Below the pieces are notes generated by a model, which saw only the letters and a list, made by a program, of their open reading frames with translations, made no database searches and was not told where the DNA came from. Below are positions 30,651 through 44,945 of a stretch of 64,000 nucleotides of DNA, in pieces. Every line of letters starts with the position of its first letter. The stretch's first letter is position 1. Where the stretch lies: positions 1-64,000 of IMG/VR virus record IMGVR_UViG_3300020473_001965; one strand, written 5' to 3'. A program made the position numbers and the translations under genes.

Positions 30651-30651
30651 T

Positions 30652-30765: not shown

Positions 30766-30805
30766 TTTGAGTACCTCTTGGTGAGAGTGACGTAAGGCGT
30801 TTCCT

Positions 30806-31220: not shown

Positions 31221-31410
31221 TGACTACCTCCAAAAACATTTCTTTCACTCTTCGCGTTGTCCCTGTCTCAGGCCACATGACGTGTACGATGTTGTACATA
31301 GAGTGCAGCCCTTGATCCTCATGCTTGACGACGATGCCGTGACCAGGTGGGTAGGCATGGATCCGACTCGAGTAGTTAACTATCTTTACTAGATCACCGA
31401 CTTTCATCAA
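31207..31410 (-). CDS. MKVGDLV-family cassette
   Basis: MKVGDLV...LEVVSESR. Confidence 0.75.
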   Translation of the reverse strand: MMKVGDLVKIVNYSSRIHAYPPGHGIVVKHEDQGLHSMYNIVHVMWPETGTTRRVKEMFLEVVSESR

Positions 31411-31624
31411 TCACCTCGAGCTCCACCACCGGGATGTTCAATTTGCAGTCGTCGTACATCACAACTGCATGCAGCTCCGGGTCTACCTCTCGCCAGTCAA
31501 TCATTGGACCCAGCTCATCTGTCCGCCAGACTTTCTTCTGAATCGTGTCGACAACAATTCCCGTACGGGTCGCGACCTGTTTTTCATCGATCTTCTTTAG
31601 TCTTACCAAATCACCTGTCTTCAT
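31394..31624 (-). CDS. MKVGDLV-family cassette
   Basis: MKTGDLV...LEVIDESR. Confidence 0.75.
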   Translation of the reverse strand: MKTGDLVRLKKIDEKQVATRTGIVVDTIQKKVWRTDELGPMIDWREVDPELHAVVMYDDCKLNIPVVELEVIDESR

Positions 31625-31802
31625 GTACTCTCTCCACTCTTTCTCGCATAATCCAGTTGCACCTGCCATCAGCCCACAGTACGACTGGGTCACGCCTCCC
31701 CGGCCGTGGGTCTGATCCTTGATTGTCTGACCAATCGATAACAACCCCTGTCATCCGACTCTCCGAAAAGAGGTTCTTCACTAAGTCACCAATCTTCAGC
31801 AT
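31611..31802 (-). CDS. MKVGDLV-family cassette
   Basis: MLKIGDLV..VLWADG..HEDR. Confidence 0.75.
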   Translation of the reverse strand: MLKIGDLVKNLFSESRMTGVVIDWSDNQGSDPRPGRRDPVVLWADGRCNWIMRERVERVHEDR

Positions 31803-31972
31803 GCCAATCTCAACTCGTCTTCCCATACACCAATCATATGCCCATCGTCCCAAAGGATCACGCAGAAACAGTACTCACCGTTAACTGTGTGCTCGGTTTC
31901 GACAACAATGCCAACCGGAAGTCCTTCGACCCCCGGTTCGCGTTTCATCTGTACGAGATCTCCTACGTTCAC
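31796..31972 (-). CDS. MKVGDLV-family cassette, 58 aa (not in ORF track)
   Basis: GTG start NVGDLVQM..GIVV..ILWDDG. Confidence 0.7.
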   Translation of the reverse strand: MNVGDLVQMKREPGVEGLPVGIVVETEHTVNGEYCFCVILWDDGHMIGVWEDELRLAC

Positions 31973-31983
31973 TCAGCTCTCCG

Positions 31984-32103
31984 TCAGTGTCCTGGGCAGT
32001 GCATGCAAAGATCGAGCACTTCAGCCAAAACGATGATTGTTGGGAACATAGCGACGATCACCGTTCCAGTGATCTGATCTTGATATTTCTTGAGTGTTTC
32101 CAT
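31984..32103 (-). CDS. 39-aa membrane peptide ending CMHCPGH (not in ORF track)
   Basis: METLKKYQDQITGTVIVAMFPTIIVLAEVLDLCMHCPGH; AAGGA RBS. Confidence 0.65.
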   Translation of the reverse strand: METLKKYQDQITGTVIVAMFPTIIVLAEVLDLCMHCPGH

Positions 32104-32150
32104 TGTCTCTTCCTTGGTGAGGAGGTTACGTTAGTAAGGTTGTTTTCCTT

Positions 32151-32191
32151 CCTTACATTCTTATTATATCCCGCGCCGCGGCGTCTTACAC
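32151..32191 (-). promoter_or_regulatory. Repeated early promoter
   Basis: 41-bp family copy. Confidence 0.8.
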
Positions 32192-32195
32192 TGGA

Positions 32196-32390
32196 TTACT
32201 CAGATTCCTTTACCACCTCGAGCCAGTCAGCCGGCTCCCAGTCTACGACCAGAGAGTCACACCACATCACACCGACTCGCCGCATGTTCCCACTAATCTT
32301 CTGGCGATCGTCAACAATTAGTCCAACCGATGGCGGCTCACCGCATGGGATCGATTCACCCGGCATTATGACGAGATCACCGGCTTTCAC
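32196..32390 (-). CDS. MKVGDLV-family cassette
   Basis: MKAGDLV..GLIV..VMW..WLEVV. Confidence 0.75.
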   Translation of the reverse strand: MKAGDLVIMPGESIPCGEPPSVGLIVDDRQKISGNMRRVGVMWCDSLVVDWEPADWLEVVKESE

Positions 32391-32690
32391 TTACGCCTCC
32401 CCCGACGCAGAGGACGACCCAGTCTCGGGTTGCGCTTCTTTACGAAGTTCCGATCGTGGTACCAAGCAGCACCGCAAGCCAGCAACACCGAGAACATCAG
32501 CATCATGAACGCTGAGAACTGAAAAAAGAATGATACTTCAGGACAATACATTATGCTGCTACCCTCCGAAACTTGAGGCGCACGTTCTTCGCTCCGCGAC
32601 TGCGCCAGATGTTGAACTGCCTGAAAGCCTCATCGCAGCTGTACGTGCCACTGTAGTGGCCACCGATAAACAACTCGTACTTGACCCGCA

Positions 32691-32858
32691 CTACTTCACC
32701 TCAGTGAGCGCGCTGGGAATGTGACGAGACAAATGATTTGACATGTCCCACTTGACGAGAATGATCGGGGTCTCATTGCCCCACTTCTTAGTCTTCGCCA
32801 ACACCCGACCAATTTGGCCGGGATAGCTGACATGCGTTACGCGAGCTCCAACCTTCAT
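32691..32858 (-). CDS. MKVGDLV-family cassette
   Basis: MKVGARV..GRV..VKWD. Confidence 0.7.
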   Translation of the reverse strand: MKVGARVTHVSYPGQIGRVLAKTKKWGNETPIILVKWDMSNHLSRHIPSALTEVK

Positions 32859-32950
32859 GAGATCACCTGTGCGATCGCCATGCAAACGCCGAGCTCTGAG
32901 ACGACGCCGAGGTATCCGAGAAGAATGTAGTTTCCGATTTGTTCAGTCAT
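32855..32950 (-). CDS. 31-aa hydrophobic peptide (not in ORF track)
   Basis: MTEQIGNYILLGYLGVVSELGVCMAIAQVIS; AAGGA RBS. Confidence 0.55.
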   Translation of the reverse strand: MTEQIGNYILLGYLGVVSELGVCMAIAQVIS

Positions 32951-32990
32951 GTTATTTCCTTGGTGAGGAGTTGATTTGTGGTAGGACCAT

Positions 32991-33031
32991 CCCTACATTT
33001 ATATAATACCACAACTTACCAAGTCTTACAT
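32991..33031 (-). promoter_or_regulatory. Repeated early promoter
   Basis: 41-bp family copy. Confidence 0.75.
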
Positions 33032-33107
33032 GAAAAAGCGAGGGATGATTCGTCTACCAACGTCGGAAGGCAGCATCCTCCGAATCTCGGCTCTCCCTCG
33101 GGAACCA

Positions 33108-33395
33108 TTACTGTTTATTATCTTCCTGTTTTCCCATTGGCGTATACCAGCTGGGCTTATTTTGCTCCATAATGATTGAAGCCTCCTTCATTATCTGCAG
33201 AATCTTGTCCGCTTGCTCCTCTGCTGTGCCGTTCACAAAACCTTCCAGCTCCTGCGGATGCGCTTCGAAGTAAAGCCGTCCGACCGTCATCTTCTCAGCT
33301 TCGGTCATCGACTCAACATTCCAGTACTTGTCTATGGCACACTTCTTCTTCCATGCGTAGTAAGCAGTGCACCCTCCAATAATCAGCTCTATCAT
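33108..33395 (-). CDS. Hypothetical protein
   Basis: ATGA-coupled to the upstream gene. Confidence 0.55.
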   Translation of the reverse strand: MIELIIGGCTAYYAWKKKCAIDKYWNVESMTEAEKMTVGRLYFEAHPQELEGFVNGTAEEQADKILQIMKEASIIMEQNKPSWYTPMGKQEDNKQ

Positions 33396-34153
33396 CGCCG
33401 GGACTGCCTTTTGCGCAGTCGCTTCGAGCTCACCGTCTGAGGCAATCCGTTGCACAAGATATCTTGCACGACTTCTGAGTATTGCGCTGTCACGTACGGG
33501 TCACTCGTTACAATAGCAGCATCATTATTCCATACCGCCAAGTCACCCTCAGAAAAACGAGGCTCAGTCAGGGTCTTAACAGCACCCTTGAACATGTTCT
33601 TGAGGCGGGACAACGCGCGGTTATCGAGAGTCCCGTGTGTGTCGTAGAACGCTTGAGCTGAACGATACTGCCTATAGTGACCCTGACGATGCTGCCAGTA
33701 CCAGTCACCGCGCTTCGTCCCATAGATGAGAAGTGCCTCTACGAGTCGTCGCTCATCATCGGTGAGCACGGGCAGACCATTGTCAGCCAACTCTTTGGCT
33801 TGTTCCAAGAGGCTAGTTAGAAAAGCCTCTTGCTTCGGGGAAAGTCGCCAGCCCTTCGACAACTTGTACTTGAAGTCACCGAGTGGTCCGGCCATGGCCT
33901 CCATCCCGGGCGTCACCATTGCTCGCTCAATCTCCGCAGTACGGTCAGCGTTATGAACGACAGGAGCACCCTGCTCGATCAGGCTGTCCAAGTACTTACG
34001 CTGGCCGGCCGAAAGACCCTTGTTGCGCTCGAGACGCGCGATCATGTCAGTCACGAATCGAGCCGACTTGTCATGCTCCATCCCAGCGTCAACCCAAAGC
34101 ACTAGCGTCTCCTTGGCCTCGCGCAACCGAACTTCCCGAGATTTCCTAGCCAT
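33392..34153 (-). CDS. Hypothetical early protein with C-terminal KOW-like segment
   Basis: GGAGG RBS; FSEGDLAVW..AIV. Confidence 0.7.
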   Translation of the reverse strand: MARKSREVRLREAKETLVLWVDAGMEHDKSARFVTDMIARLERNKGLSAGQRKYLDSLIEQGAPVVHNADRTAEIERAMVTPGMEAMAGPLGDFKYKLSKGWRLSPKQEAFLTSLLEQAKELADNGLPVLTDDERRLVEALLIYGTKRGDWYWQHRQGHYRQYRSAQAFYDTHGTLDNRALSRLKNMFKGAVKTLTEPRFSEGDLAVWNNDAAIVTSDPYVTAQYSEVVQDILCNGLPQTVSSKRLRKRQSRR

Positions 34154-34286
34154 TATCGACCTCCATCGATGAGAATAAAAAGTGTCATGACAACCGGTAG
34201 CGGCCACCAAAGTTTCAGAAGTTTCAAAGCGACCTGTCCCATCAGGATCCAGGTACCAGCATCAGCAAGATTCTCCACAGCGTTCT

Positions 34287-34327
34287 CCTTACTTTCTAAT
34301 AATATCACGCTATGGCTTATCTTACAC
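34287..34327 (-). promoter_or_regulatory. Repeated early promoter
   Basis: 41-bp family copy. Confidence 0.8.
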
Positions 34328-34542
34328 TAAGCTGTCATCATTTCTTTGGGTACTTTAGCTTTTGTCTCAATCTCATTGAGGAGCCGACTGAGAGACGTCA
34401 CCTCGTCGACTTCTTGTTCAAACGTAGCACCGTCAGCTAGTCGCTGCCTGCATGCTTGGTAAGCTTTATTTAGTTTCGTCCAACGCTCGAGTTCTGCGAG
34501 CCCGAGGTTCGTGTATACATACGACGCAGCAGATCCCATCAT
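34327..34542 (-). CDS. Hypothetical protein
   Basis: GGAG RBS. Confidence 0.55.
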   Translation of the reverse strand: MMGSAASYVYTNLGLAELERWTKLNKAYQACRQRLADGATFEQEVDEVTSLSRLLNEIETKAKVPKEMMTA

Positions 34543-34552
34543 TATCTCCGTT

Positions 34553-34840
34553 CTAAACTAGTTTGATGAGTTTTATCGAATTGAGCGCCTGCTCCAGGTA
34601 GATCCTTTGTTGTTTGAGTTGTGCTACCTGTGTGTCAATAGTGGCACCTGACTCATGCAGGCAACCGAGTGGTGCCAAGTCTGCTTCTGTTCCTTTGCGC
34701 TCGAGTTGATCGACTACAAGTGAGATCCGCGAGCGAATGTTTGTGAGATTTGTCTTGAGCGTAATCGCAGTCTTTTCAAGTGCAGCTCTAGCTTCACCCA
34801 TCTCCTGCGCCATTACAGCCAGCTTGTCATAATCTTCCAT
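34553..34840 (-). CDS. Hypothetical coiled-coil protein
   Basis: Directly after a promoter-like GTGTAC..TACAAT. Confidence 0.6.
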   Translation of the reverse strand: MEDYDKLAVMAQEMGEARAALEKTAITLKTNLTNIRSRISLVVDQLERKGTEADLAPLGCLHESGATIDTQVAQLKQQRIYLEQALNSIKLIKLV

Positions 34841-34890
34841 GCTTTATTGTATCGTGAACACACTATAGTGTACACCTGAAAGCAAACTTT

Positions 34891-35091
34891 TTATTGAGTC
34901 GCCGACTCCGCCTCATCTTCTTCGTTCCACATGATGAAACAACCGATCGTAGTGATGGGAATCCAGAAAACTGCAGGACCCCATGACACCCAAGAGTGAG
35001 CATCGACTCCAAACAGTTGCACGAACCATGCCCAACCGCACGGTGGAATCCAACAGGCGGTGACCCATTCAACAAAACGAGGTGGCAACAT
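34891..35091 (-). CDS. Trp-rich membrane protein
   Basis: AAGGAG RBS; hydrophobic. Confidence 0.55.
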   Translation of the reverse strand: MLPPRFVEWVTACWIPPCGWAWFVQLFGVDAHSWVSWGPAVFWIPITTIGCFIMWNEEDEAESATQ

Positions 35092-35196
35092 TACTGATCT
35101 CCTTGATAAACAGTTTTATGCTTTTGCTTTCTTGTATACTTCTTAGGGCTGTGAGCACCCGCTCCGGTTCTGAAGTGCGCTTGCACAGCGACCCAG

Positions 35197-35526
35197 TTAC
35201 GGGGCTTCGGAGTCTTTGGTGATTTCTTCTTCTTCTTTGCCATTGCAAGAGTCCTTTCCTAACTGTTCTATTGTACCATAGTCAGGCTCGCAATACACTA
35301 AAAGATCAGATAAAAGTTGGAGCTCTTTCTGATACATGTGACACTGTTGTGCGCGACGCAAGATATCATTGTTAGAGCCGTAGTAACCGTCTTCTCCTCG
35401 CGATTCTATGCGTCTCTGCAGATCGTGAGCCGCGTCGAGCAGCCCTTTAAGTGATCGATCGACTGCATCTAGAACCCACCTCTTGCGCTCTAGAATGTAC
35501 TCAGATTCTTTCTTCTTCTCGCCCAT
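35197..35526 (-). CDS. Hypothetical protein
   Basis: ORF track. Confidence 0.6.
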   Translation of the reverse strand: MGEKKKESEYILERKRWVLDAVDRSLKGLLDAAHDLQRRIESRGEDGYYGSNNDILRRAQQCHMYQKELQLLSDLLVYCEPDYGTIEQLGKDSCNGKEEEEITKDSEAP

Positions 35527-35539
35527 GTATCAACTCATG

Positions 35540-35818
35540 TCACTCCGCAGGAGTCATCTGTGTAGCACGTAGGCGGTCCAGATGTACTCTCTGGAGTTCA
35601 CCGTTACTAAGCACGTCGTACATTTCGTCTTCGTACCATTTCATCGGTCGGCCTTCGCCCCAGTACGACTCGACGACTCTTTCAATGACAAGACCATCAA
35701 CCCACAGCCACTCGTCGAAGCCTTCTAGTTGAGTAGTAGCAACCCAGACTTGTTCGCCCAATTCGAATCGCCAGCGGTTGTTCGCCGTAAACTTCTCTTC
35801 TGCGTTTTTGTCTCTCAT
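35540..35818 (-). CDS. KOW/SH3-like hypothetical protein
   Basis: FELGEQVWV..GLVI..YDVL. Confidence 0.6.
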   Translation of the reverse strand: MRDKNAEEKFTANNRWRFELGEQVWVATTQLEGFDEWLWVDGLVIERVVESYWGEGRPMKWYEDEMYDVLSNGELQRVHLDRLRATQMTPAE

Positions 35819-35834
35819 TTTACTGCTTTCTTTT

Positions 35835-35921
35835 TGGTAGGACAGGCGGGACTCGAACCCGCATGCTCATTCGAGCGAGAGATTTTAAGTCTCTTGTGTC
35901 TACCGATTCCACCACTGTCCC
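35835..35921 (-). tRNA. tRNA-Leu(UAA)
   Basis: Cloverleaf with long variable arm, loop CTTAAAA, CCA. Confidence 0.95.
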
Positions 35922-35927
35922 GAGTTT

Positions 35928-36005
35928 TGGTAGGCTCACCGGGACTCGAACCCGGAACCCGCAGTTTATGAGACTGCTGCTCTAACCTGATTGAGCTATG
36001 AGCCT
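35928..36005 (-). tRNA. tRNA with CAU anticodon, probably Ile2 (alternatively elongator Met)
   Basis: Cloverleaf, loop CTCATAA, AGGCTCA acceptor resembles Ile tRNAs, CCA. Confidence 0.9.
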
Positions 36006-36014
36006 GTAAGATGT

Positions 36015-36130
36015 GAGACACCTGTTTGTTAGTCGATAATAGTTGTATGCGCGTTAATAACCGACTGCTAGGCTGTGCCTCCCTGCGCCCGGGCGAGCGT
36101 TTGTGTCCCTGACCTAATGTCTCCGCCGCC
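36015..36130 (-). ncRNA. Candidate small structured RNA between tRNA-Lys and tRNA(CAU)
   Basis: GAGACA..TGTCTC closing stem, AGTCGGT..ATCGACT; upstream promoter-like ATGAAC..TACGAT. Confidence 0.4.
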
Positions 36131-36177
36131 ACTCTTTATCGTACCGCGCTCCCCGTCAATGTTCATGCCAAAAGTAA

Positions 36178-36253
36178 TGGTGGGCCGTCCGAGACTCGAA
36201 CTCGGAACCTGCGGATTAAAAGTCCGATGCTCTGCCGGTTGAGCTAACGGCCC
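36178..36253 (-). tRNA. tRNA-Lys(UUU)
   Basis: Cloverleaf, loop CTTTTAA, CCA. Confidence 0.95.
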
Positions 36254-36257
36254 GTAC

Positions 36258-36692
36258 GATAGAGTTCCCAGCTTCTCTATCTAGACACAGCCTGTAAAGT
36301 CAGTACTTCGACTACGCTTACGCAACCACGAGATAGCTTACTGCTCGTAAGTCTTACCCACTATCTCTCTGGCCTGTGTCCCCCACTATAAGAAAGAGCT
36401 TTGGTGAGTTGGCACGTATCCCAGTACCCGTTCGCTCACCCTTGTGTTTCGGAAGTGCTCTACCCTCCCGATCTTCGCCGCCCCTCCCTTGTGCACAGGG
36501 AATGGCATTGAAAATGTAAAGTGAAGAGGAGGTAGGAATCCGTTTAGTTCGGCCGAGACATGCGGTTGGTGCATCATGCCTCTCGGTGCCGCGGACCTCT
36601 TGTGACCACCAATACGTCACTCACCGTCAGCTTCTTTGTTCGACGACTGCCGATTCCTACCAGTTCCTCGGACCGCTAAATCCAAGGCCTCT
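36258..36692 (-). ncRNA. Candidate structured ncRNA(s) in the tRNA operon leader
   Basis: Long-range GGTAGGAATC/GATTCCTACC, CCGAGA/TCTCGG, GGTGAG/CTCACC, GACACAG/CTGTGTC and GAGATAG/CTATCTC helices; no credible ORF. Confidence 0.6.
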
Positions 36693-36696
36693 AAAT

Positions 36697-36731
36697 TGTC
36701 AAAGAGCGGAGAGGACCTAATCTTTCGATTC
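36697..36731 (-). promoter_or_regulatory. boxB-like GAAA hairpin plus boxA (CGCTCTTTGACA) antitermination site
   Basis: Resembles rrn leader arrangement; lies between promoter and RNA genes. Confidence 0.6.
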
Positions 36732-36767
36732 CAGACGGCTGAACCATCAGCGCGAGCAGTGTCCTTT

Positions 36768-36808
36768 CCTTACTTTCTTATTCTACCACGTTTGGGGGGT
36801 TTTTACAT
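36768..36808 (-). promoter_or_regulatory. Repeated early promoter
   Basis: ATGTAA-N17-TAGAAT, 41-bp family. Confidence 0.8.
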
Positions 36809-36813
36809 CAAAA

Positions 36814-36890
36814 TGGCACGCCCGATAGGATTCGAACCTATGACCCTCGGCTTAGAAGGCCGATGCTCTATCCAGCTGAGCTACGGGCGC
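36814..36890 (-). tRNA. tRNA-Arg(UCU)
   Basis: Cloverleaf, loop TTTCTAA-type with anticodon TCT, CCA. Confidence 0.95.
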
Positions 36891-36895
36891 TTAGT

Positions 36896-37114
36896 TCATG
36901 TCGTAAATTCGTCTTCGATCCAGTCGTCGTCGTCTTCGTCATCGGCAACGTCTTCGTCCCAAACCATCGGCTCTTCGTCAGCTGACTCGCCCAATCCGTT
37001 CTGTCTGTTCTTCTCATCAATGACACCAGTCAACAAAATGATCTGGCCTTCGTCGTCGTAGACTATATCCCAGTGAAGCTCGCGAGCCATTTCTTCAATA
37101 TCGCTGATCGTCAT
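36896..37114 (-). CDS. Acidic hypothetical protein
   Basis: ATGA coupling; D/E-rich tail. Confidence 0.6.
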   Translation of the reverse strand: MTISDIEEMARELHWDIVYDDEGQIILLTGVIDEKNRQNGLGESADEEPMVWDEDVADDEDDDDWIEDEFTT

Positions 37115-37326
37115 TCTGTCACCGACATCGGAGTATCTGTCTTCTTCACAGTCTTTATCAAGCCCTCAAGCAACCCAGCAACCTCACCTCTCTGAGCACG
37201 AAGCGTATAACTCCTCCCAAACCGAATGATAATGTCCTGAGTAGCCTTGCACTCCTCGACTGAGACTCTTTCTGTACCCGCGTCAGTAGCCACTGACATT
37301 TGCTTAAGCAGCTTGTTGTATGTCAT
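37111..37326 (-). CDS. Hypothetical protein
   Basis: GGAGG RBS after promoter 37335-37373. Confidence 0.6.
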   Translation of the reverse strand: MTYNKLLKQMSVATDAGTERVSVEECKATQDIIIRFGRSYTLRAQRGEVAGLLEGLIKTVKKTDTPMSVTE

Positions 37327-37334
37327 TTCCTGCC

Positions 37335-37373
37335 TCCACCTCTATTCTACCGTGCGTTTCTTCCGTTTTACAC
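37335..37373 (-). promoter_or_regulatory. Repeated early promoter (variant)
   Basis: GTGTAA-N17-TAGAAT. Confidence 0.65.
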
Positions 37374-37533
37374 GACATAAAACTTTTTTTGCTTTAACAG
37401 CGCACATCTTAACTTGCAGCTGCAAAGCTCCGAGGACCACAGCGCCTGCAACGATAGCCGTCATATAGAACGGTACCGTCCGCTGCTCCTTCCCTGTTTC
37501 TCTTCTTTCCCATGGTTCTGACATAGATTCATT

Positions 37534-37583
37534 GCCCCGAAAGGGCCGCCCGGCTCACCAAGGAAGAGGTGACCCACCGGGCG
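37534..37583 (-). other. 3'-UTR double hairpin whose loop and arm are antisense to the shared early-gene leader
   Basis: CGCCCGG..TCACC-TCTTCCTT-GGTGA..CCGGGCG; 37554-37568 is the exact reverse complement of 32107-32121. Confidence 0.7.
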
Positions 37584-37595
37584 ACAAGAGCGTCA

Positions 37596-38345
37596 TTAGC
37601 CGACGCTCACTCGGGCCACCTCCTGAAAACCTGTTGCGCGCAAGTTGAGGTAGAAGATGTGACCGGCACCGCCGAAGCGATTCTTCTCGGTCGTCAGAAC
37701 ACGACACCCGAAGAGGTCCTGGTCCTTGCGCTCCACGTCCAGCGCGAGCTTTGCATCTACCATGTGCTTGAGCTTGTTGCTACCAGCCATCTGGCCGCCC
37801 TTCGTCACCTGACCGATGATGATGGCATTGACCATGTGGGCCTTGCAGTAGTCTGTAATCATCTGAAGAGCGCGCTCAGCAGTCGCGGTCGTGATTCGAC
37901 CGGTGTTGAACTTACCGTCCTCCATGCACTGCAGCGAGTCCACGATCAGGACGAAGTCCTTACCCGGGTTTGCAGCACGAACCGCGTCGCAGTTCGCCAG
38001 TAGCTGGGGAACGTTTGTCTCCTGCCCTGCCACGAAACCGCTCCGCAGCTTCAGCCGCTCTGCAGTCATCCGTACTTGGTACAACGACTCCTCAGCTGTG
38101 TTGAACATTGCAACAGCTCCCTTGCGGGTCAAGCTGTTAGCCAGCGTGAGCATCATAGTCGTCTTACCCGAACCAGGGGTACCGGTGAAAAGATAGACAG
38201 CCGAAGGAGTAAGTCCCTCGCCGCCAAGAGCGTCGTCAAAGAATTTGACACCGGTTGGGATTCTCCGCCGCAGTGCGTCGGGCACCTCGATCTCGAGGAT
38301 GTTGGTTCCAACTTTGATTCCATTGTCGCGTACGTTGAGCTTCAT
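37596..38345 (-). CDS. RadA/Sms-like RecA-fold ATPase (core only)
   Basis: GTPGSGKTT, IVDSLQ, KHMVDA, KNRFG signature; no Zn-finger or Lon domain. Confidence 0.85.
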   Translation of the reverse strand: MKLNVRDNGIKVGTNILEIEVPDALRRRIPTGVKFFDDALGGEGLTPSAVYLFTGTPGSGKTTMMLTLANSLTRKGAVAMFNTAEESLYQVRMTAERLKLRSGFVAGQETNVPQLLANCDAVRAANPGKDFVLIVDSLQCMEDGKFNTGRITTATAERALQMITDYCKAHMVNAIIIGQVTKGGQMAGSNKLKHMVDAKLALDVERKDQDLFGCRVLTTEKNRFGGAGHIFYLNLRATGFQEVARVSVG

Positions 38346-38388
38346 TTTTGATTTCCTTGGTGAGGAGTTGTTAAGCGTAAGTGTTATT

Positions 38389-38429
38389 CCTTACTATCTA
38401 ATAATACCATGTGCAGCCGGGCTTTACAC
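38389..38429 (-). promoter_or_regulatory. Repeated early promoter
   Basis: 41-bp family copy. Confidence 0.8.
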
Positions 38430-38695
38430 TAATTATGCGCGTACCCTGAAGTAAGACTATAAACTGCTGCTGTTCGCTGCAACTTTTCGATGGCTTCAGC
38501 CTTGTCGACTTCTGCTGTGATCTTGACTTCCTGAGGGAGCTCTTCGAAGAGAGTGTTCCCATCGAGCTCTACAGTTGCGCGCTCGACCAGCTCCTGGACA
38601 GAGCTCGTGATCACAAGATTTGCGGCAAACAGCTCGGCTCGTACCTTCGACTGCTCAAAAGGAGTAAGCTTTTCGATCTCTGTAATCTCGCTCAT
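38429..38695 (-). CDS. Hypothetical protein
   Basis: Start at MSEITE. Confidence 0.55.
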   Translation of the reverse strand: MSEITEIEKLTPFEQSKVRAELFAANLVITSSVQELVERATVELDGNTLFEELPQEVKITAEVDKAEAIEKLQRTAAVYSLTSGYAHN

Positions 38696-38973
38696 CCGAA
38701 CACCGCGTTGAAAGCACCAATAAAGATCCATGAGTAGATAACCCACAGCAAACTGATGACAAGCATAAAGCCGCCAATGTAAGCACATGCCATCATCATG
38801 GCAGTGTCGATTCCCCAGTTAACCCAATCTTTCATTGTTTCTCTCCATCTCCGATCAAAAGGTTGGCAAAGAGCTTGAAGCCCTCACCACAAAAGTAAAT
38901 GAATATCCAAGAGGCGAAAGTCAGCGCCCACATAATAAGAAATACCTTGAAAACGAACTCCATTGCCGCCTCT

Positions 38974-39014
38974 CCTTACTTTCTTATTCTACCACAACTA
39001 CGGGTGCGTTACAC
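38974..39014 (-). promoter_or_regulatory. Repeated early promoter
   Basis: 41-bp family copy. Confidence 0.8.
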
Positions 39015-39324
39015 GAAGTTTCGCATCATCAAACTCAAGGACACGCCCTGCTTTCTCTTCGAAGTCACTTAGCTTGCTAATGCGTCTACTGAGAACATCA
39101 CAAAGCTGGATGCAATCGACTTCCCACTCACCCTCTTCCCCTGCGTCGTCCAGAGGTACCGCTACCTCCATTGTCCGTGCTTGCCCAGCGATAGCTCCCT
39201 CTCGGAAACGATCGAGTACTTCAAGTACAAGACCTGTCGTCTTCACGTCACCGCGATCTAGGAACGTAATAGTATCGCCCGCTTCAATGAACGGGCTCCT
39301 ACCAAAGTCTGGTTTGATCAGCAT
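38998..39324 (-). CDS. KOW/SH3-like hypothetical protein
   Basis: IEAGDTITF..GLVLEV. Confidence 0.6.
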   Translation of the reverse strand: MLIKPDFGRSPFIEAGDTITFLDRGDVKTTGLVLEVLDRFREGAIAGQARTMEVAVPLDDAGEEGEWEVDCIQLCDVLSRRISKLSDFEEKAGRVLEFDDAKLRVTHP

Positions 39325-39331
39325 GTCACCC

Positions 39332-39697
39332 CTACCAGTTGATTGGGTCGTTGCTAGGGCGACCCCAAACGTCTACTTTCTGCGTCTCCGAACGATTGGC
39401 TTTTTTCTGTGCCTCACGTGCTTCGACACCTGCATCGAACATGTCCTTCTCGCTTTGGGTGTCCAGCGCACCTTCAATGAAGAAACTGAAGGTGTCGTCC
39501 TTCGACCAGTCATTGTCGAACGCAAGACCGTAGCCGATAAGCTGGACAGTTTCAGGACAGCACTCCGCGGGTGCGTCAAACTCCTGCACTGAGTAGTTCA
39601 GGTCGCCATCAAAGCCTTCCTGCTCTACATAATCCATCAGGTCTTCGATTCCCTCGAAGTCGTCCATGCTACCAATGATAAAAGTATAGGTCTTCAT
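39332..39697 (-). CDS. Acidic hypothetical protein
   Basis: GGAGG RBS. Confidence 0.65.
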   Translation of the reverse strand: MKTYTFIIGSMDDFEGIEDLMDYVEQEGFDGDLNYSVQEFDAPAECCPETVQLIGYGLAFDNDWSKDDTFSFFIEGALDTQSEKDMFDAGVEAREAQKKANRSETQKVDVWGRPSNDPINW

Positions 39698-39698
39698 T

Positions 39699-39878
39699 CT
39701 ATTTGCCCTCCGCTTGCAAGCGCTTCTTGTATCCCTGTGCCTCGCTCCGGCTCAGACCGCTTACCACCGGCCGAATGAACGGGTCACAGATTGGGCTACG
39801 CATCCCCTTGACGTCTGAAGAGCGAAACACCGCCCAGCTGTAAGAGTCATCTCCCATAAACTTCTTGATTGTGTACAT
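39699..39878 (-). CDS. 59-aa hypothetical protein (not in ORF track)
   Basis: MYTIKKFMGDDSYSWAVF...; AAGGAGG RBS after promoter. Confidence 0.65.
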   Translation of the reverse strand: MYTIKKFMGDDSYSWAVFRSSDVKGMRSPICDPFIRPVVSGLSRSEAQGYKKRLQAEGK

Positions 39879-39890
39879 TGTGTACCTCCT

Positions 39891-39931
39891 TGGTTCTATC
39901 TAATAATACCACGCTGCGATGCGTTTTACAC
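39891..39931 (-). promoter_or_regulatory. Repeated early promoter
   Basis: 41-bp family copy. Confidence 0.75.
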
Positions 39932-40341
39932 TAAAGCACGGGCGTGTGATTGGGGTCGTCGGTCACCAGGTCTACAGCTGCCTTGTATCGGGCGTGGTCA
40001 TATCCTTGTGTGTCGATAAGCAGCCTATCTCCCATCTGATGGTCCGGACCGTCGAAGCACTTTACGATAAACTTCGTGGGGTCACCCGCCATCTTACGAG
40101 CGTGAAAGAGCATCGCGAGGTCTTCGAACTCAGGCAGCCAAAAGACCAGCTCGCGGAACTCTGAGTACGGCACAAGCAGCTCCACAGGGACCAGCTCCAC
40201 CTCCTTACCCGGCAGTCCGCATCTCCGCAGAACCTCCGTGATTGTCGGGTACTGCTCTTCATCTGCTTCGACACACAGACACATGTTCTCATCAAACATC
40301 GTGTGCTTCTTCCGATATCCCGCGTGTTCTACTACAAACAT
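39931..40341 (-). CDS. Hypothetical protein
   Basis: TAATG coupling; DTQGYDHARY motif. Confidence 0.6.
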   Translation of the reverse strand: MFVVEHAGYRKKHTMFDENMCLCVEADEEQYPTITEVLRRCGLPGKEVELVPVELLVPYSEFRELVFWLPEFEDLAMLFHARKMAGDPTKFIVKCFDGPDHQMGDRLLIDTQGYDHARYKAAVDLVTDDPNHTPVL

Positions 40342-40739
40342 TATTCTTCCTCGTCTTCCCATGGCATTCTAAGGTCTACGCCAGGCATAGAGATCACTTG
40401 ATTGCCTACTTGAATGGTAACTCGTTCTCCACCGCCGAGTGTCTCCAGGACAATCCCAAAGCTCCCAGTGGTCACTCCGCGGGCATTCCATGGTACCCGC
40501 TTGATCTCGACTAAGTCCCCTTCTTGATAAGGGAACGTCCGAACTTTTCGAGGCCCCTGCATGCGTGCGTATGCCTTCGCGCTCCGCCGCTGCGATCGCC
40601 GCTCTTTAGCTGCCGCCGGGTCGTAGCCCTCAGTCATCTCGAGCTTCCGCTCGGTGACCTCAATCTCACCCTCAGCCTCTAGAGCTTTTTTCTGTGCCTT
40701 GATGGTTCTGAGTAGATTGCGAGGAATCTTGGGTGCCAC
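40341..40739 (-). CDS. Basic protein with C-terminal KOW-like domain
   Basis: YQEGDLVEIK..GIVLE. Confidence 0.65.
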   Translation of the reverse strand: MAPKIPRNLLRTIKAQKKALEAEGEIEVTERKLEMTEGYDPAAAKERRSQRRSAKAYARMQGPRKVRTFPYQEGDLVEIKRVPWNARGVTTGSFGIVLETLGGGERVTIQVGNQVISMPGVDLRMPWEDEEE

Positions 40740-40748
40740 TGGGTACCT

Positions 40749-40789
40749 CCTTACTTTCTTATTCTACCATGCTCCCACGTATCTTACAC
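40749..40789 (-). promoter_or_regulatory. Repeated early promoter
   Basis: 41-bp family copy. Confidence 0.8.
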
Positions 40790-41365
40790 GGAACCCGTGT
40801 GTATCATTGAGCGAACGGCAGTCCAGAACTCGATCTCATTAGTATGGTGACTCAGCTGCCTTCTCGAGTCATTCACTGATGTCCTCGATCGTTCGTCTAG
40901 CTTCTGAAGACAGGGCTCGAGCATTTCGTTGCCCGGCCCATAGACAAGCTTTACCCTGACATCCCCCGGCCGGGTGAGACGATGAAGATTGGTCAGCCAC
41001 TGAAAGAGGTAGTACGACACAGTCCTCGCTTCTTCTATGTTTGCAGCCGGAATGTAACCAGCAGGGGTATACCCAATAGTCACCTCATAGACTCCGCTTC
41101 CGCCCTCTTCTGACCGCTGGGTCACTAGAGGTTCTAGGGTGGACCATATCCTCTTTGCAGCTGTCCTCAACTCCTCGCGATCATCATCCGGCAAAGACCA
41201 TTGACTCAGTAGTCCAGACCCTTCAGGCCGGTGCTGCCAGACTTCTGTAAACAGCCCAGTCTCCACGTCATAGGCGTTTCTCAAATTGCTATCCCAAGCT
41301 TCGTCGACTGTAGGGGCGTATGTGATGTCCTCAAGCATTGTCTTGAGCAAGGACACTAGACCCAC
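40784..41365 (-). CDS. Hypothetical protein, paralogue of 44186-44923
   Basis: GVYEVTIGY..YIPAANIEEA. Confidence 0.65.
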   Translation of the reverse strand: MGLVSLLKTMLEDITYAPTVDEAWDSNLRNAYDVETGLFTEVWQHRPEGSGLLSQWSLPDDDREELRTAAKRIWSTLEPLVTQRSEEGGSGVYEVTIGYTPAGYIPAANIEEARTVSYYLFQWLTNLHRLTRPGDVRVKLVYGPGNEMLEPCLQKLDERSRTSVNDSRRQLSHHTNEIEFWTAVRSMIHTGSV

Positions 41366-41562
41366 CTGTCTAGTCGAGTAGAGTGCTCGAGCTTAGTTTC
41401 CTCTTCCTCTTCAACCTCAACCGGTGTTGGCTCCAGGTATGGGTCTAGACTATCGCCCCTGATCCACATCCCAAACTGAGCACCCCACGTCGGATGAAGG
41501 CTGATAGCAATGAGGAAGCCCCAGACTCCGAATCCGATGATAGTGAATAGCGCTTCAACCAT
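41356..41562 (-). CDS. Small membrane protein
   Basis: N-terminal TM; TAATG coupling. Confidence 0.6.
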   Translation of the reverse strand: MVEALFTIIGFGVWGFLIAISLHPTWGAQFGMWIRGDSLDPYLEPTPVEVEEEEETKLEHSTRLDRWV

Positions 41563-42905
41563 TACGCCGCCTCCTTGCTTGCATTGCCCTTCAGCTCCAC
41601 GACTGTGTCACCGCGGTGTGCGTCGAAGTACAGCTTGCGTCCCGGGACGATCACCCATGCCCGACGCATGCGGGAGGGACCAGGGTCGGCAGCCTCCCCG
41701 TCGGTGCAGACGATGTAGCCATCGAAGCGGTGACGGTTCTCTTCAGCGTGCCGAGCAACTGCCCTGAAGCACGTGCCGCCGCAGCGGAAGCGGTTGAGCT
41801 TCGAGCGCGAGCCCTTCTTCCAGACGATCTCATTGTCGGTGTCAACCGTGCTGTCGAATGGGTAGAAGGTGAACGTTACCTTGCGTGCCAGCTGCTCCAG
41901 CTCTGCGTAGAGCAGTGCCAGCGACTCATCATCAACCGAGCCACTCTGATCGACGTAGACTGCCACGTTGGCGCTGTGACCAATCTTGCGGCCGCTGTGG
42001 ATGTAGGGGTACTTGCGGTTGAGACGCTTCATGGTGCGGCTCTTGTTAGCGCGCTGACTCATGCCAACGAAGTTACGAAGGACTGCGCGCCAGTCAACCT
42101 CATTCGAGCACATCCGACGGAGCTCGCTCCGCATCTCAGCGGGCACCGAGCCCCACTGGCCCTTGCTGTCACACTTCTTGACTGCGTTCTTGAGGGCTTG
42201 CTTGACCTTGCCCTTGACGAGCTCCTTCTCAGCGTCGGTAGCACCCTCGCCCCACTCACCGTGGTCGTCCATGGTACCGGGAACGCCGTCTCCCTCTCCG
42301 GGCTGGCCGCCTTGGCCGTCGCCACCAGTGAGATCGTCCTTCATCTGCTCGTCATCCATCAGCTGGCCGAAGTACCACTCCGCGCTCATGTTCGGCGGGA
42401 AGCTTTCAATCTTTGCCGAGATGCGATCGAAGCGTGCCTTGGCCTGCTCATCGAGCTTGGCGTACGCATCCGGATCGATGTGGATGGCCTGGCCAGGAAT
42501 GAGACCACCCTTGGGAAGCTCCTCCACTGGGATGATCGAGTTGATCGCGAGGTCGGTCGCGTAGTTGTGAACGATGTGCGGGGTCTTCTTGCGGCTAGTC
42601 GTGTGCTCGAAGACCAGGTGGTACACCTCGTGCTTGAGAAGTCCCTTTACTTCTTTGTTGCTCAGCGAGGCGAGGAAGCGGCGGTTCCACCACATCTTGA
42701 TATCACCGTCCTTGGCGAGCACGCCGGCGGTCGGGATCGAGTCCGTCTCCACCTTGGTGACGTCACGAAGCATGGCCGAGAAAAAGGGCTCATCCCACAT
42801 CAACGCTGTGAGGTGGTTGCCAAGGTCGAAAGCAGCGAGCTCCGCGTCGGTCAGCTCTGCGCCTGGTGCCACTGGGATGTCGGTCGAGGTAGTGTTGTCA
42901 GCCAT
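41562..42905 (-). CDS. DUF2201-type metallopeptidase-VWA protein
   Basis: HEVYH, NYATDLAIN, DQSGS MIDAS, GGT, TDG. Confidence 0.88.
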   Translation of the reverse strand: MADNTTSTDIPVAPGAELTDAELAAFDLGNHLTALMWDEPFFSAMLRDVTKVETDSIPTAGVLAKDGDIKMWWNRRFLASLSNKEVKGLLKHEVYHLVFEHTTSRKKTPHIVHNYATDLAINSIIPVEELPKGGLIPGQAIHIDPDAYAKLDEQAKARFDRISAKIESFPPNMSAEWYFGQLMDDEQMKDDLTGGDGQGGQPGEGDGVPGTMDDHGEWGEGATDAEKELVKGKVKQALKNAVKKCDSKGQWGSVPAEMRSELRRMCSNEVDWRAVLRNFVGMSQRANKSRTMKRLNRKYPYIHSGRKIGHSANVAVYVDQSGSVDDESLALLYAELEQLARKVTFTFYPFDSTVDTDNEIVWKKGSRSKLNRFRCGGTCFRAVARHAEENRHRFDGYIVCTDGEAADPGPSRMRRAWVIVPGRKLYFDAHRGDTVVELKGNASKEAA

Positions 42906-42914
42906 TTGTTATCT

Positions 42915-42955
42915 CCTTACTATCTAATAATATCACGCTGCGCCGAATCTTACAC
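42915..42955 (-). promoter_or_regulatory. Repeated early promoter
   Basis: 41-bp family copy. Confidence 0.85.
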
Positions 42956-43016
42956 CAAAGCGCGCCAGCTCCACCACAGAGCTGACGCTTTGGCACACCC
43001 TCTAGCGAGGACTGAA

Positions 43017-44045
43017 TCATGAACGGCTAGCCTGAACGGCCTCGACGACCTTCTTACCGATGAGCTTGTGAAGCTTCTGGATGTTCTTCAGGTTGGAAGT
43101 ACCAGACACCTGGTTCCAGAGGTGAACGAGCATCTCGGAGCTAGGAAGAGCGTTGGCGAACGCGGCCACGTTGGCAGCCTGGCTGGCCTTCCACTCGTTG
43201 TCCTTGCAGTGAGCTGCGAGCTTGCCGATCAGGCCGTTGACCTTGGAGGCCTCGAAGCCCTTGATCTGCTCCGCCACTGCCTCGAAGTTGTCGAGCACGT
43301 CCTCAGCGGACACCTCGTTCTCCCAGTTCTTGGCGAACTCCACCAGCGAGATGGCAGCTTCAACACCGACCATACCCAGAGCGACCGGGTACCACACGTC
43401 GGAAGGCTGCTCCACCTCACCCATGTGCTTGAGGCTCAAGTCAAGGCGTTCCCACGAAGCGGGGTTCGGGGCGACCTTGCCAGGCTCCGTCGCTGCGGTA
43501 GGACGAAGGTGCTCCTCGTGCTGACGAATGAAGTCGACGATGACAGGGGCCAGACGACCCTCAGCCCAGTCGAGGAAGTCAGCGTGAGTCGGCTCCAACT
43601 CAATGCTCCAGAAACGACGGAGAAGAGCAGGGTCCATCTCGTTGACCTCGTACTCGGCACCAACGTTGACCGCCGCGAAGACGCGGGTGTCAGGGTGCAG
43701 CTTGTGACCGTTGAGCTCCCGGTCCAGGACGATCTGGAACGCAGCCTGAATGACCTCGGGGGTCGCACGGTTGAGCTCGTCCATGAAGAGGACGACTGGC
43801 TCACGGCAAGCTTGAGCGTACCAGTCTGGCGGGCAGAAGCGAGTGGTACCATCGACCAGCTCGGGGAGACCAACCATGTCACCTTCGCTCATTTGCGACA
43901 GGCGGCGGTCGATCACCGGCAGCTCCAACCCGGCTGCGATATCCTTGACGAGGTACGACTTACCGATACCGGTAGGACCTTGAATGAGGACCGCAATCTC
44001 TGCGGGGAGGCGAGGGGCGATGTTGTTGAAAGTCTTGATGTCCAT
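43017..44045 (-). CDS. MoxR-type AAA+ ATPase
   Basis: GPTGIGKS, LFMDELNRA, MDPALLRRF, PNPASWE. Confidence 0.9.
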   Translation of the reverse strand: MDIKTFNNIAPRLPAEIAVLIQGPTGIGKSYLVKDIAAGLELPVIDRRLSQMSEGDMVGLPELVDGTTRFCPPDWYAQACREPVVLFMDELNRATPEVIQAAFQIVLDRELNGHKLHPDTRVFAAVNVGAEYEVNEMDPALLRRFWSIELEPTHADFLDWAEGRLAPVIVDFIRQHEEHLRPTAATEPGKVAPNPASWERLDLSLKHMGEVEQPSDVWYPVALGMVGVEAAISLVEFAKNWENEVSAEDVLDNFEAVAEQIKGFEASKVNGLIGKLAAHCKDNEWKASQAANVAAFANALPSSEMLVHLWNQVSGTSNLKNIQKLHKLIGKKVVEAVQASRS

Positions 44046-44082
44046 GCTAGTTTCCTTGGTTAGAGGGGGTGTGTTTTTGTTT

Positions 44083-44123
44083 CCTTACTATCTAATAATA
44101 TCACGTCGCGACGGGTCTTACAC
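44083..44123 (-). promoter_or_regulatory. Repeated early promoter
   Basis: 41-bp family copy. Confidence 0.85.
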
Positions 44124-44185
44124 CGTTTTCACCGCTTATTAGTAAGTATTCTGTTCAACGGTGAAACTCTGCGGTGGAGCTGCCG

Positions 44186-44923: not shown

Positions 44924-44945
44924 ATGTCTGTTCTCCTTAGTGATT

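What the first reader, a model, noticed from the sequence alone, without database searches (positions are those of the whole stretch)
37534..37583. 3'-UTR hairpin exactly antisense to the shared ribosome-binding leader of early operons
Seen: after the RadA-like stop, the transcript forms CGCCCGG..UCACC-UCUUCCUU-GGUGA..CCGGGCG with an exposed anti-Shine-Dalgarno loop. Its CUCUUCCUUGGUGAG is a perfect 15-nt complement of the leader at 32107-32121, 12 nt of 32956-32967 and 38353-38364 (its own mRNA), and 9 nt of 30777-30785 and 44052-44060. All these targets overlap or adjoin the RBS. Inference: a 3'-UTR-derived small RNA, or a fold-back element as in hok mRNA, that shuts off a regulon of early operons. 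Because the cassettes are translationally coupled, blocking one leader could silence a whole train.
Basis: partly seen in the sequence, partly recalled or inferred. Interest (0 to 1): 0.8.

Follow-up and report, generated by a model that had tools for sequence, protein, structure and literature searches.

The report
Phage hairpin complementary to ribosome-binding leaders
Just after a RadA-like gene of an uncultured marine jumbo phage lies a conserved RNA hairpin whose tip has co-evolved across many related phages to stay complementary to the phage's own ribosome-binding leaders, so it most likely controls translation by RNA-RNA pairing.

Summary
The minus-strand RNA after the RadA-like stop folds into a 10-bp outer stem, a 5-bp inner stem and an 8-nt pyrimidine loop (37585-37545). 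Its 15-mer is the exact complement of the leader at 32107-32121. It matches 12 nt of the leaders at 32956-32967 and 38353-38364, and 9 nt at 30777-30785 and 44052-44060. All five sites lie 3-11 nt upstream of a start codon.

Comparison with about 20 close and about 100 distant relatives shows the match is not chance:
- **Outer stem:** it changes freely through compensatory substitutions.
- **Anti-leader segment:** CCUUGG plus 4-5 nt tracks lineage-specific changes in the leader (CAC/GUG, AAC/GUU, GAC/GUC, AGC/GCU, CUAGAC/GUCUAG). One lineague has an unrelated RBS, CCUGGGGAG, and carries CUCCCCAGG.
- **Permutation tests:** P = 1.5e-4 over 9 lineages and P < 1e-5 over 40.
- **Copy number:** one copy per genome fragment sampled.
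- **Terminator status:** in distant lineages the hairpin is an intrinsic terminator; the window clade has lost the U-tract.
- **Rivals:** there is no conserved opposite-strand gene and no Rfam match.

The most likely function is an anti-RBS element, acting in cis as a fold-back or in trans as a 3' fragment. This resembles the icaR 3'UTR. Repression and a stable small RNA have not been shown.

The parts
37545..37585 (-). Conserved stem-loop: a 10-bp covarying outer stem, a 3-nt bulge, a 5-bp inner stem and an 8-nt pyrimidine loop.
   Evidence: Folds. The covariance model R1 scores 68.2 bits here and finds one copy in the window. The outer helix is 100% paired, with 5 pairs changed on both sides.
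37554..37568 (-). Anti-leader segment CUCUUCCUUGGUGAG, made of the loop 3' part, the 3' inner arm and 1 further nt. The core CUUGGUGA is nearly invariant in close relatives.
   Evidence: the 3' arm is invariant and only the 5' arm varies.
37534..37547 (-). Second small hairpin (GCCC-UUUC-GGGGC) that overlaps the weak SD of the next gene. It is present only in the window subclade.
37596..38345 (-). RadA/KaiC-like RecA-superfamily ATPase of 249 aa, the cistron that carries the element at its 3' end.
   Evidence: Pfam PF06745 at 1.9e-12, PHROG hits, and tblastn at about 31% identity to annotated RadA/Sms.
38353..38364 (-). RadA's own leader target CUCACCAAGGAA (positions -19 to -8 from the AUG, includes the SD AAGGA). 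It is a 12-nt complement of the hairpin.
   Evidence: -20.5 kcal/mol. In the full-mRNA MFE, 12 of 12 leader nucleotides pair with the anti-leader.
38383..38432 (-). Promoter-like element of the RadA cassette, one of about 15 copies. It is followed by a 5' stem-loop, GUAAG...CUUAC.
   Evidence: (D1/D2).
32107..32121 (-). Leader with the perfect 15-nt complement. It sits upstream of a 39-aa hydrophobic peptide ORF (32103-31984).
   Evidence: I17; -28.1 kcal/mol, best site in 64 kb.
32956..32967 (-). Leader with a 12-nt complement, upstream of a 31-aa hydrophobic peptide ORF (32950-32855).
30777..30785 (-). Leader with a 9-nt complement (CUCACCAAG), upstream of a 37-aa hydrophobic peptide ORF (30765-30652).
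44052..44060 (-). Leader with a 9-nt complement (ACCAAGGAA) of the MoxR-like AAA_5 ATPase gene (44045-43017). In several other lineages this leader shares the RadA leader's lineage-specific motif.
37342..37524 (-). Downstream 60-aa small membrane-protein gene (MSEPW...), conserved in position in the relatives.

Best explanation
The hairpin is a conserved RNA element at the 3' end of the RadA-like cistron. Ancestrally it was that gene's intrinsic terminator. In the window clade it has lost the U-tract and now sits between cistrons.

Its tip carries an 'anti-leader': a pyrimidine run, then CCUUGG, then 4-5 nt. Selection keeps this segment complementary to the extended ribosome-binding motif that this phage uses in front of RadA itself and several other first genes of promoter cassettes.

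The most likely action is RNA-RNA pairing that covers the Shine-Dalgarno region (-19 to -8 in the RadA leader). The 8-nt loop would start the pairing and the weak inner stem would then open. This could happen within the RadA mRNA (a 5'-3' fold-back), in trans as a stable 3' fragment, or both. The expected result is lower translation and perhaps cleavage of the duplex.

Shown: the structure, the strand, the single copy, the complementarity and its co-evolution. Inferred: that pairing happens in the cell, that it represses, and whether it acts in cis or in trans.
For: **Structure.** Across 11 distinct close relatives the outer helix is 100% paired, and 5 of its 10 pairs changed on both sides. 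The covariation score is 0.43 against 0.18 for shuffles (0 of 500 reached it). Sliding the partner columns drops pairing below 48%.

**Strand.** About 20 of 163 cells are G-U pairs, which would be A-C mismatches on the other strand.

**Sequence constraint beyond the stem.** The 3' inner arm and loop end, CUUGGUGA, are invariant while the 5' arm drifts among UCACC, UCGCC, CCGCC, CGACC and UUGCC.

**Co-variation with the leader across deep lineages**:
- CUCAC|CAAGG with CCUUG|GUGAG in the window clade.
- AAC with GUU in L024 and L100 (11 nt in L100).
- GAC with GUC in L066, L067 and L068 (CUAGACCAAGG, 11 nt, in L066).
- AGC with GCU in L074 (11 nt) and L072.
- In L238/L056 the RBS consensus is CCUGGGGAGG at 5 genes, and CUCCCCAGG lies 3' of RadA.

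**Permutation tests.** Own-versus-permuted flank complementarity is 31 against 17.4 +/- 3.0, P = 1.5e-4. Over 40 unselected lineages it is 274 against 233.5 +/- 7.2, P < 1e-5.

**Copy number.** There is one copy per genome fragment, always right after RadA (268 kb searched).

**Position.** Targets sit on the SD, 3-11 nt before the ATG.

**Energetics.** The top duplex site in 64 kb is a leader, and 0 of 2000 shuffled queries reached it. The full-length mRNA MFE pairs leader and anti-leader in 4 of 6 lineages.
Against: - There is no direct RNA evidence. Only low-depth assembled metatranscriptome contigs exist, and one of them spans the hairpin.
- The 5-bp inner stem partly sequesters the anti-leader.
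- The leader motif also exists, and is shared among leaders, in lineages without any anti-leader hairpin (L070, L071 and the 51% clade). The leaders therefore do not depend on the hairpin.
- L060 has the hairpin, but its RadA leader lacks the motif.
- In the L002/L016 and L012/L015 subclades, loop changes weaken the SD-side pairing rather than being compensated.
- The lineages are related, so the independent compensated switches number about 3-5 and the permutation P-values are optimistic.
- MFE predictions for 870-nt RNAs are unreliable.
Confidence: 0.6

Rival explanations
1. The same 5'-3' pairing occurs but has a positive or protective outcome. The leader-hairpin duplex would shield the RadA mRNA ends from ribonucleases, or couple stability to translation as in B. 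subtilis hbs, rather than repress translation.
For: The evidence for pairing is the same co-variation as for the best explanation. The hbs precedent is in PMC5737220. In most lineages the element is the terminator hairpin, a natural 3' stabiliser.
Against: The duplex covers the SD itself, which normally blocks 30S binding. None of the data here distinguish the two outcomes.
Confidence: 0.15
2. The hairpin is an ordinary terminator or mRNA-stability stem-loop. Its complementarity to leaders is a relic of an inverted duplication, or chance, and has no function.
For: Relatives at about 51% identity and several other lineages have plain GC hairpins with a U-tract, or nothing, at the same place. 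In distant lineages the element is followed by a U-tract.
Against: The anti-leader stays conserved while the outer stem turns over. It tracks at least 4 different leader states and one unrelated RBS motif. A relic would decay. Chance expectation for a 9-nt match is of the order of 1e-3 to 1e-2 per lineage.
Confidence: 0.1
3. The shared motif is a DNA or RNA binding site for a phage factor whose specificity differs between lineages. The inverted copy in the hairpin would be one more site, so all copies co-evolve with the protein and not with each other.
For: The leader motif is shared by several leaders within a genome, even where no hairpin exists. This shows the motif has its own constraint.
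Against: The motif's position is fixed relative to start codons, not to promoters, and in L056 it is essentially the SD. The inverted copy always sits in the apex of an RNA hairpin with G-U-bearing covarying stems on the sense strand. Leader-hairpin pairs include G-U wobbles in L068 and L002, which are mismatches at the DNA level.
Confidence: 0.08
4. The sequence is the ribosome-binding site of a gene on the opposite (window plus) strand, such as the 144-aa ORF 37569-38003.
For: On the plus strand the sequence reads AAGGAAGAGGTG, with a GTG opening a 144-aa ORF. A genome-typical RBS would also track the genome's consensus.
Against: Fifteen of 22 hairpin-bearing relatives have no start codon within 14 nt. 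Where a GTG exists, the ORF is 22-26 codons. The G-U pairs favour the RadA-sense strand. No promoter element lies in that orientation.
Confidence: 0.02

Closest known systems
icaR mRNA 5'-3' UTR interaction, Staphylococcus aureus (PMC3868564)
   Same: Both have a pyrimidine-rich anti-SD motif downstream of the stop codon that is complementary to the SD region of the same mRNA. In icaR, pairing blocks the initiation complex and creates an RNase III substrate.
   Different: Here the motif sits inside the apex of a terminator-type hairpin, not in a long 3' UTR. It belongs to a phage and matches a leader shared by several genes. It is supported by cross-lineage co-variation but by no experiment. 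In the window clade the hairpin is intercistronic.
hok mRNA fold-back inhibition (fbi/tac) of the hok/Sok system (recalled from memory, not checked here)
   Same: In both, a 3'-terminal element pairs with the 5' translation-control region of the same mRNA and keeps the full-length transcript inert.
   Different: RadA-like is not a toxin. No Sok-like antisense gene and no 3' trimming step is evident. The nearest hok-like flavour is that three predicted targets encode 31-39 aa hydrophobic peptides.
3'UTR-derived small RNAs that share the mRNA's terminator (for example NarS, PMC7038943; CpxQ and SroC from memory)
   Same: In both, a regulatory RNA would arise from the 3' end of an mRNA and pair with RBS regions of other mRNAs. 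In distant lineages the element ends in a U-tract.
   Different: In those sRNAs the seed is normally single-stranded and lies upstream of the terminator. Here the seed is in the hairpin apex. The window copy lacks a U-tail, and no stable fragment has been shown.
B. subtilis hbs 5'/3'-UTR interaction (PMC5737220)
   Same: Both involve long-range pairing between the two ends of one mRNA, tied to translation initiation.
   Different: The hbs interaction protects against RNase Y and stabilises the mRNA. The outcome here is unknown.
Phage T7 gene 1.2 mRNA and RNase III (Saito and Richardson 1981; recalled from memory, could not be retrieved)
   Same: It is a phage precedent in which sequence at the 3' end of an early mRNA pairs with an upstream ribosome-binding site and inhibits translation.
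   Different: In T7 this is seen when RNase III processing fails. The present stem of 15 bp is shorter than typical RNase III sites, and no processing is known.

Membership tests
Intrinsic (Rho-independent) terminator | A G+C-rich stem-loop. | tested here: met
   The element has a 10-bp GC-rich outer stem plus a 5-bp inner stem.
Intrinsic (Rho-independent) terminator | A U-tract directly after the stem. | tested here: not met
   In the window the stem is followed by GGCCCUUUCGGGGC or a C-rich tract, and the terminator scan does not list it. The feature is met in distant lineages L024, L060, L062, L066, L067, L068 and L074.
Intrinsic (Rho-independent) terminator | It marks the end of a transcription unit. 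| tested here: inconclusive
   No promoter element lies between the hairpin and the next ORFs. The next promoter copy is at 36762-36811. One metatranscriptome contig spans the hairpin.
icaR-type 3' region / 5' UTR anti-SD pairing | A pyrimidine-rich motif 3' of the stop codon, complementary to the SD region of the same mRNA. | tested here: met
   A 12-nt Watson-Crick complement covers -19 to -8 of the RadA leader.
icaR-type 3' region / 5' UTR anti-SD pairing | The pairing is maintained in evolution. | tested here: met
   Compensatory states occur across lineages, with permutation P = 1.5e-4 and P < 1e-5.
icaR-type 3' region / 5' UTR anti-SD pairing | Pairing blocks initiation-complex formation and/or gives an RNase III substrate. 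| not testable with these tools
   This needs toeprinting, RNase III assays and reporter fusions.
3'UTR-derived trans-acting sRNA | A stable small RNA accumulates from the mRNA 3' end. | tested here: inconclusive
   Only Logan contigs at depth 2-5 exist. The exact pieces are 37435-37585, 37639-37789 and 37434-37617, and they carry no end information.
3'UTR-derived trans-acting sRNA | The seed is complementary to several target mRNAs at their RBS. | tested here: met
   Five leaders in the window match over 9-15 nt, and the best site in 64 kb is a leader. Two to five leaders match per genome in other lineages.
3'UTR-derived trans-acting sRNA | A single-stranded seed upstream of a terminator hairpin with a U-tail. 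| tested here: not met
   The seed lies inside the hairpin apex, half in the loop and half in the inner stem, and the window copy has no U-tail.
hok-type fold-back inhibition | A 3' element pairs with the 5' translation-control region of the same mRNA. | tested here: inconclusive
   The pairing is predicted in the MFE of the full-length mRNA in 4 of 6 lineages. This is a prediction only.
hok-type fold-back inhibition | The mRNA encodes a small toxin and has a cognate antisense RNA gene. | tested here: not met
   The cistron is a 249-aa RecA-superfamily ATPase. No antisense promoter or gene was found.
T7-type RNase III processing hairpin | An irregular duplex of about two helical turns (about 20 bp) with an internal loop. 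| tested here: not met
   Only 15 bp are present in the window clade.
Any Rfam family | A match to a curated covariance model. | tested here: not met
   There is no hit on the hairpin at gathering threshold or at E <= 10.

The most novel reading that the evidence does not exclude
Each phage of this group would carry exactly one 'anti-RBS' RNA, embedded in the RadA terminator. This RNA co-evolves with the genome's own extended ribosome-binding consensus (CUCACCAAGGAA, CUAGACCAAGG, UAGCCAAGGAA or CCUGGGGAGG). It would act in trans as a master brake on translation of a set of early cassettes. In this window those cassettes include three small hydrophobic peptides, which would make the element partly analogous to a trans-encoded type I antitoxin.
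Probability: 0.25. Interest if true: 0.8.

Novelty: new variant of a known kind. Interest (0 to 1): 0.66.

Why it matters
Post-transcriptional control in phages is poorly charted, and in uncultured jumbo phages it is almost unknown. This case gives a structured RNA family found only by comparison. It has a clear predicted partner, the phage's own ribosome-binding leaders, and natural compensatory variants that can serve directly as an experimental design. If pairing is confirmed, it would extend the icaR/hok type of 3'-to-5' mRNA control to viruses. It would also show that a terminator hairpin can carry a regulatory seed in its apex. Finally, it would give a handle on how these phages time or limit expression of early genes: RadA-like and MoxR-like ATPases and small membrane peptides.

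Tried and rejected
- **Near-DNA search of isolated phages:** only tRNA matches were found, so there is no cultured close relative. The protein search gave RadA/Sms hits at about 30% identity only.
- **RNA evidence:** runs holding the stretch are kept only as assembled contigs. Most of the signal was foreign tRNA, and three exact pieces at depth 2-5 tell nothing about RNA ends.
- **First RNAduplex scan:** it included outer-stem bases and was dominated by GC-rich coding sites, so it was uninformative. It was redone with the accessible 16 nt.
- **16S 3'-end mimic idea:** UCACCUC is shared with the anti-SD tail, but the 5' arm that carries it is the variable part. Rejected.
- **Opposite-strand RBS or gene:** rejected.
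- **Invertible RadA segment flanked by inverted repeats:** every relative has the same orientation relative to the upstream MoxR-like gene, and the stem has RNA-type G-U pairs. No support.
- **nut/boxB-like site:** the geometry does not fit, and it would not predict co-variation with leaders.
- **Pairing with the downstream gene's SD:** only 4-7 nt, and inconsistent between lineages.
- **Loop variants in L012/L015 and L002/L016:** no leaders were found that compensate them.
- **Extra scans with L100 and L141 queries:** these added only the L238 state.
- **T7 gene 1.2 precedent:** it could not be retrieved from the paper library.

Full report
**What is there.** Genes in this part of the window run on the minus strand. 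A 249-aa RadA/KaiC-like RecA-superfamily ATPase occupies 38345-37596. After its TAA stop the RNA reads GUCGCCCGGU-GGG-UCACC-UCUUCCUU-GGUGA-GCCGGGCGGC (37585-37545). That is a 10-bp outer stem, a 3-nt bulge, a 5-bp inner stem and an 8-nt pyrimidine loop. A small second hairpin follows, and then the ATG at 37524 of a 60-aa membrane protein. There is no U-tract. The 15-mer CTCACCAAGGAAGAG occurs exactly twice in 64 kb: once in the hairpin in inverted orientation, and once at 32107-32121.

**Context.** The 29-46 kb region is built of cassettes. About 15 copies of a promoter-like element (TGTAAGAC, a GC-rich spacer, GTGGTATTATTAGATAGTAAGGAG) each precede one or a few genes. Many are preceded by a hairpin-plus-T terminator. 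In short-leader cassettes the promoter-proximal GTAAGGAG serves as the SD. In long-leader cassettes that sequence is buried in a 5' stem-loop, and a second SD lies within CTCCTCACCAAGGAA, 3-11 nt before the ATG. This long leader precedes RadA, three 31-39 aa hydrophobic peptides and, in a variant form, a MoxR-like AAA_5 ATPase. The window comes from a 236-kb uncultured viral contig that encodes PrkA, SpoVR, a tmRNA and five tRNAs.

**The hairpin is a conserved RNA structure on the RadA-sense strand.** About 20 marine metagenome relatives with 69-99% RadA identity carry it at the same place.
- On 11 distinct sequences the outer helix is 100% paired, and 5 of 10 pairs changed on both sides. Examples are CGCCCGG/CCGGGCG, CGGACGG/CCGUCCG, GCUGGGUGGGG/CCCACCCAGC and GGGAGGGG/CCCCUCCC.
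- The covariation score is 0.43 against 0.18 for shuffles, and sliding the partners drops pairing below 48%.
- G-U pairs in about 12% of cells fit only the sense strand.
- A covariance model finds one copy per genome fragment in 268 kb, always directly after RadA.
- Rfam has no matching family.

**The tip is constrained in sequence, not only in structure.** In the inner helix only the 5' arm varies (UCACC, UCGCC, CCGCC, CGACC, UUGCC). The loop end plus 3' arm, CUUGGUGA, is invariant. That is the pattern expected when one strand has a second partner.

**The second partner is the leader.** Wider searches recovered about 100 more RadA-like loci. In several deep lineages a GC hairpin after RadA again carries CCUUGG plus 4-5 nt on the 3' side of its apex. 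There it is followed by a U-tract, so it is a canonical terminator. Those 4-5 nt follow the bases just upstream of CCAAGG in that genome's own RadA leader:
- Window clade: CUCA with UGAG.
- L024 and L100: AA with UU (11 nt in L100).
- L066, L067 and L068: GA with UC. L066 has CUAGACCAAGG with CCUUGGUCUAG, 11 nt. L068 has 13 bp with two G-U pairs.
- L074 and L072: AG with CU (UAGCCAAGGAA, 11 nt, in L074).

Two lineages with a different RBS have matching 3' sequence. L122 has CCAU(C)GAGG with CCUC-AUGG. L238/L056 uses CCUGGGGAGG at five genes and carries CUCCCCAGG just after the RadA stop.

Permuting hairpins among nine lineages gives a flank complementarity of 31 against 17.4 +/- 3.0 (P = 1.5e-4). 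An unselected comparison of 40 representative lineages gives 274 against 233.5 +/- 7.2 (P < 1e-5).

On a RadA protein tree the four main states fall into separate, well-supported clades, so at least three compensated switches occurred. The lineages are related, so these P-values overstate the number of independent events.

**Cis or trans.** The complement always includes RadA's own leader, which fits a fold-back. MFE folds of the 870-nt mRNA pair the two elements in 4 of 6 lineages, including 12 of 12 nt in the window. However, the motif is shared by other leaders: five in the window, four in L016 and five in L056, and by the MoxR-like gene's leader in L066, L067, L068, L072 and L074. In the window the best target is another gene's leader, at 15 nt and -28.1 kcal/mol, the top site on the whole sense strand. 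RadA's own leader scores -20.5. L060 has the hairpin, but its RadA leader does not match. The data cannot separate the two modes.

The leader motif also exists in lineages without any anti-leader (L070, L071 and the 51% clade). The leader therefore has its own reason to exist, as an extended RBS, and the hairpin follows it.

**Rivals.**
- *Opposite-strand RBS.* This is rejected. Fifteen of 22 hairpin-bearing sequences have no start codon within 14 nt on that strand, and the 144-aa antisense ORF is peculiar to the window.
- *Functionless relic or chance.* This does not fit the conservation amid stem turnover, nor the tracking of leader states.
- *A factor-binding site present in both orientations.* This would explain co-evolution, but not the constant placement in the apex of a covarying RNA hairpin, the fixed spacing to start codons, or the G-U wobbles in the intermolecular pairs.
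- *A protective rather than repressive outcome of the same pairing.* This stays open.

**RNA evidence.** Marine metatranscriptome runs contain exact fragments of this phage across the hairpin. They are assembled contigs at depth 2-5, so they neither show nor exclude a small RNA. One piece, 37434-37617, reads through the hairpin.

**Comparison with known systems.** The closest experimentally established parallel is the icaR mRNA of S. aureus. Its 3' UTR motif UCCCCUG pairs with its own SD, blocks initiation and creates an RNase III site (PMC3868564). Related ideas are hbs 5'/3' UTR pairing (PMC5737220) and 3'UTR-derived sRNAs (PMC7038943). From memory only, the hok fold-back and the T7 gene 1.2 case are also related.

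The present element differs from these in four ways: it is viral, it sits in the apex of a terminator-type hairpin, it matches a leader shared by several genes, and it has natural compensatory variants. I rate it a new variant of a known kind. The mechanism (repression, cis or trans) is inferred.

Noticed in passing
window 29402-45782 (minus strand): About 15 copies of a roughly 50-nt promoter-like element: TGTAAGAC, an 11-12 nt GC-rich and often palindromic spacer, then GTGGTATTATTAGATAGTAAGGAG. Terminator hairpins with T-runs often abut the next -35.
   Followed up: partly
window 38365-38400, 32122-32160, 32968-33000, 30786-30815 (minus strand): In long-leader cassettes the promoter-proximal SD-like GUAAGG is buried in a 5' stem-loop (GUAAGG...CCUUAC). 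In short-leader cassettes the same GUAAGGAG serves as the SD of the first gene.
   Followed up: no
window 29600-32900 (minus strand): A family of at least 8-11 paralogous small genes of about 55-80 aa begins MKVGDLVK. They are seen as DNA repeats D4/D5 and in the ORF translations.
   Followed up: no
window 30652-30765, 31984-32103, 32855-32950 (minus strand): The first genes behind three motif-bearing leaders are 31-39 aa hydrophobic peptides. Two of them end in CMHC(V/P)G.
   Followed up: no
window 5354-5720; 17896-17971; 35835-36890; 9400-12684: The phage encodes a tmRNA (tag ANNNYHYEQRLAA), five tRNAs (Thr, Leu, Met, Lys, Arg), and PrkA-like and SpoVR-like proteins.
   Followed up: no
window 1-22000 versus 30000-46000: There is a strong G+C difference within one viral contig: 36-43% against 50-60%.
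   Followed up: no
window 46803-46989: A cluster of short direct repeats (AGTTACTTGCGGGCA and CGAGGAAAAGTTACTTG) looks iteron-like (D17/D20).
   Followed up: no
L003-L005, L027-L033, about 20-60 nt after the RadA stop: In the roughly 51% identity clade the RadA gene is followed by a plain terminator and then a perfect palindrome, TTGCAACTAGTTGCA, conserved across contigs.
   Followed up: no
L056: 6309, 7594, 7985, 9103, 12213: This lineage uses a genome-specific extended RBS, CCTGGGGAGG, at five or more genes. Its complement lies just after the RadA stop, upstream of the terminator hairpin and not in the apex.
   Followed up: partly
L048 and L052 (contig 3300020469_000008); L049 and L053 (contig 3300006802_000087): Some viral contigs carry two RadA-like paralogues 15-20 kb apart.
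   Followed up: no
window 37434-37789: Exact fragments of this phage occur in two seawater metatranscriptome runs of 2025, so the phage is present in sampled communities. The remaining signal on the stretch was foreign tRNA.
   Followed up: partly
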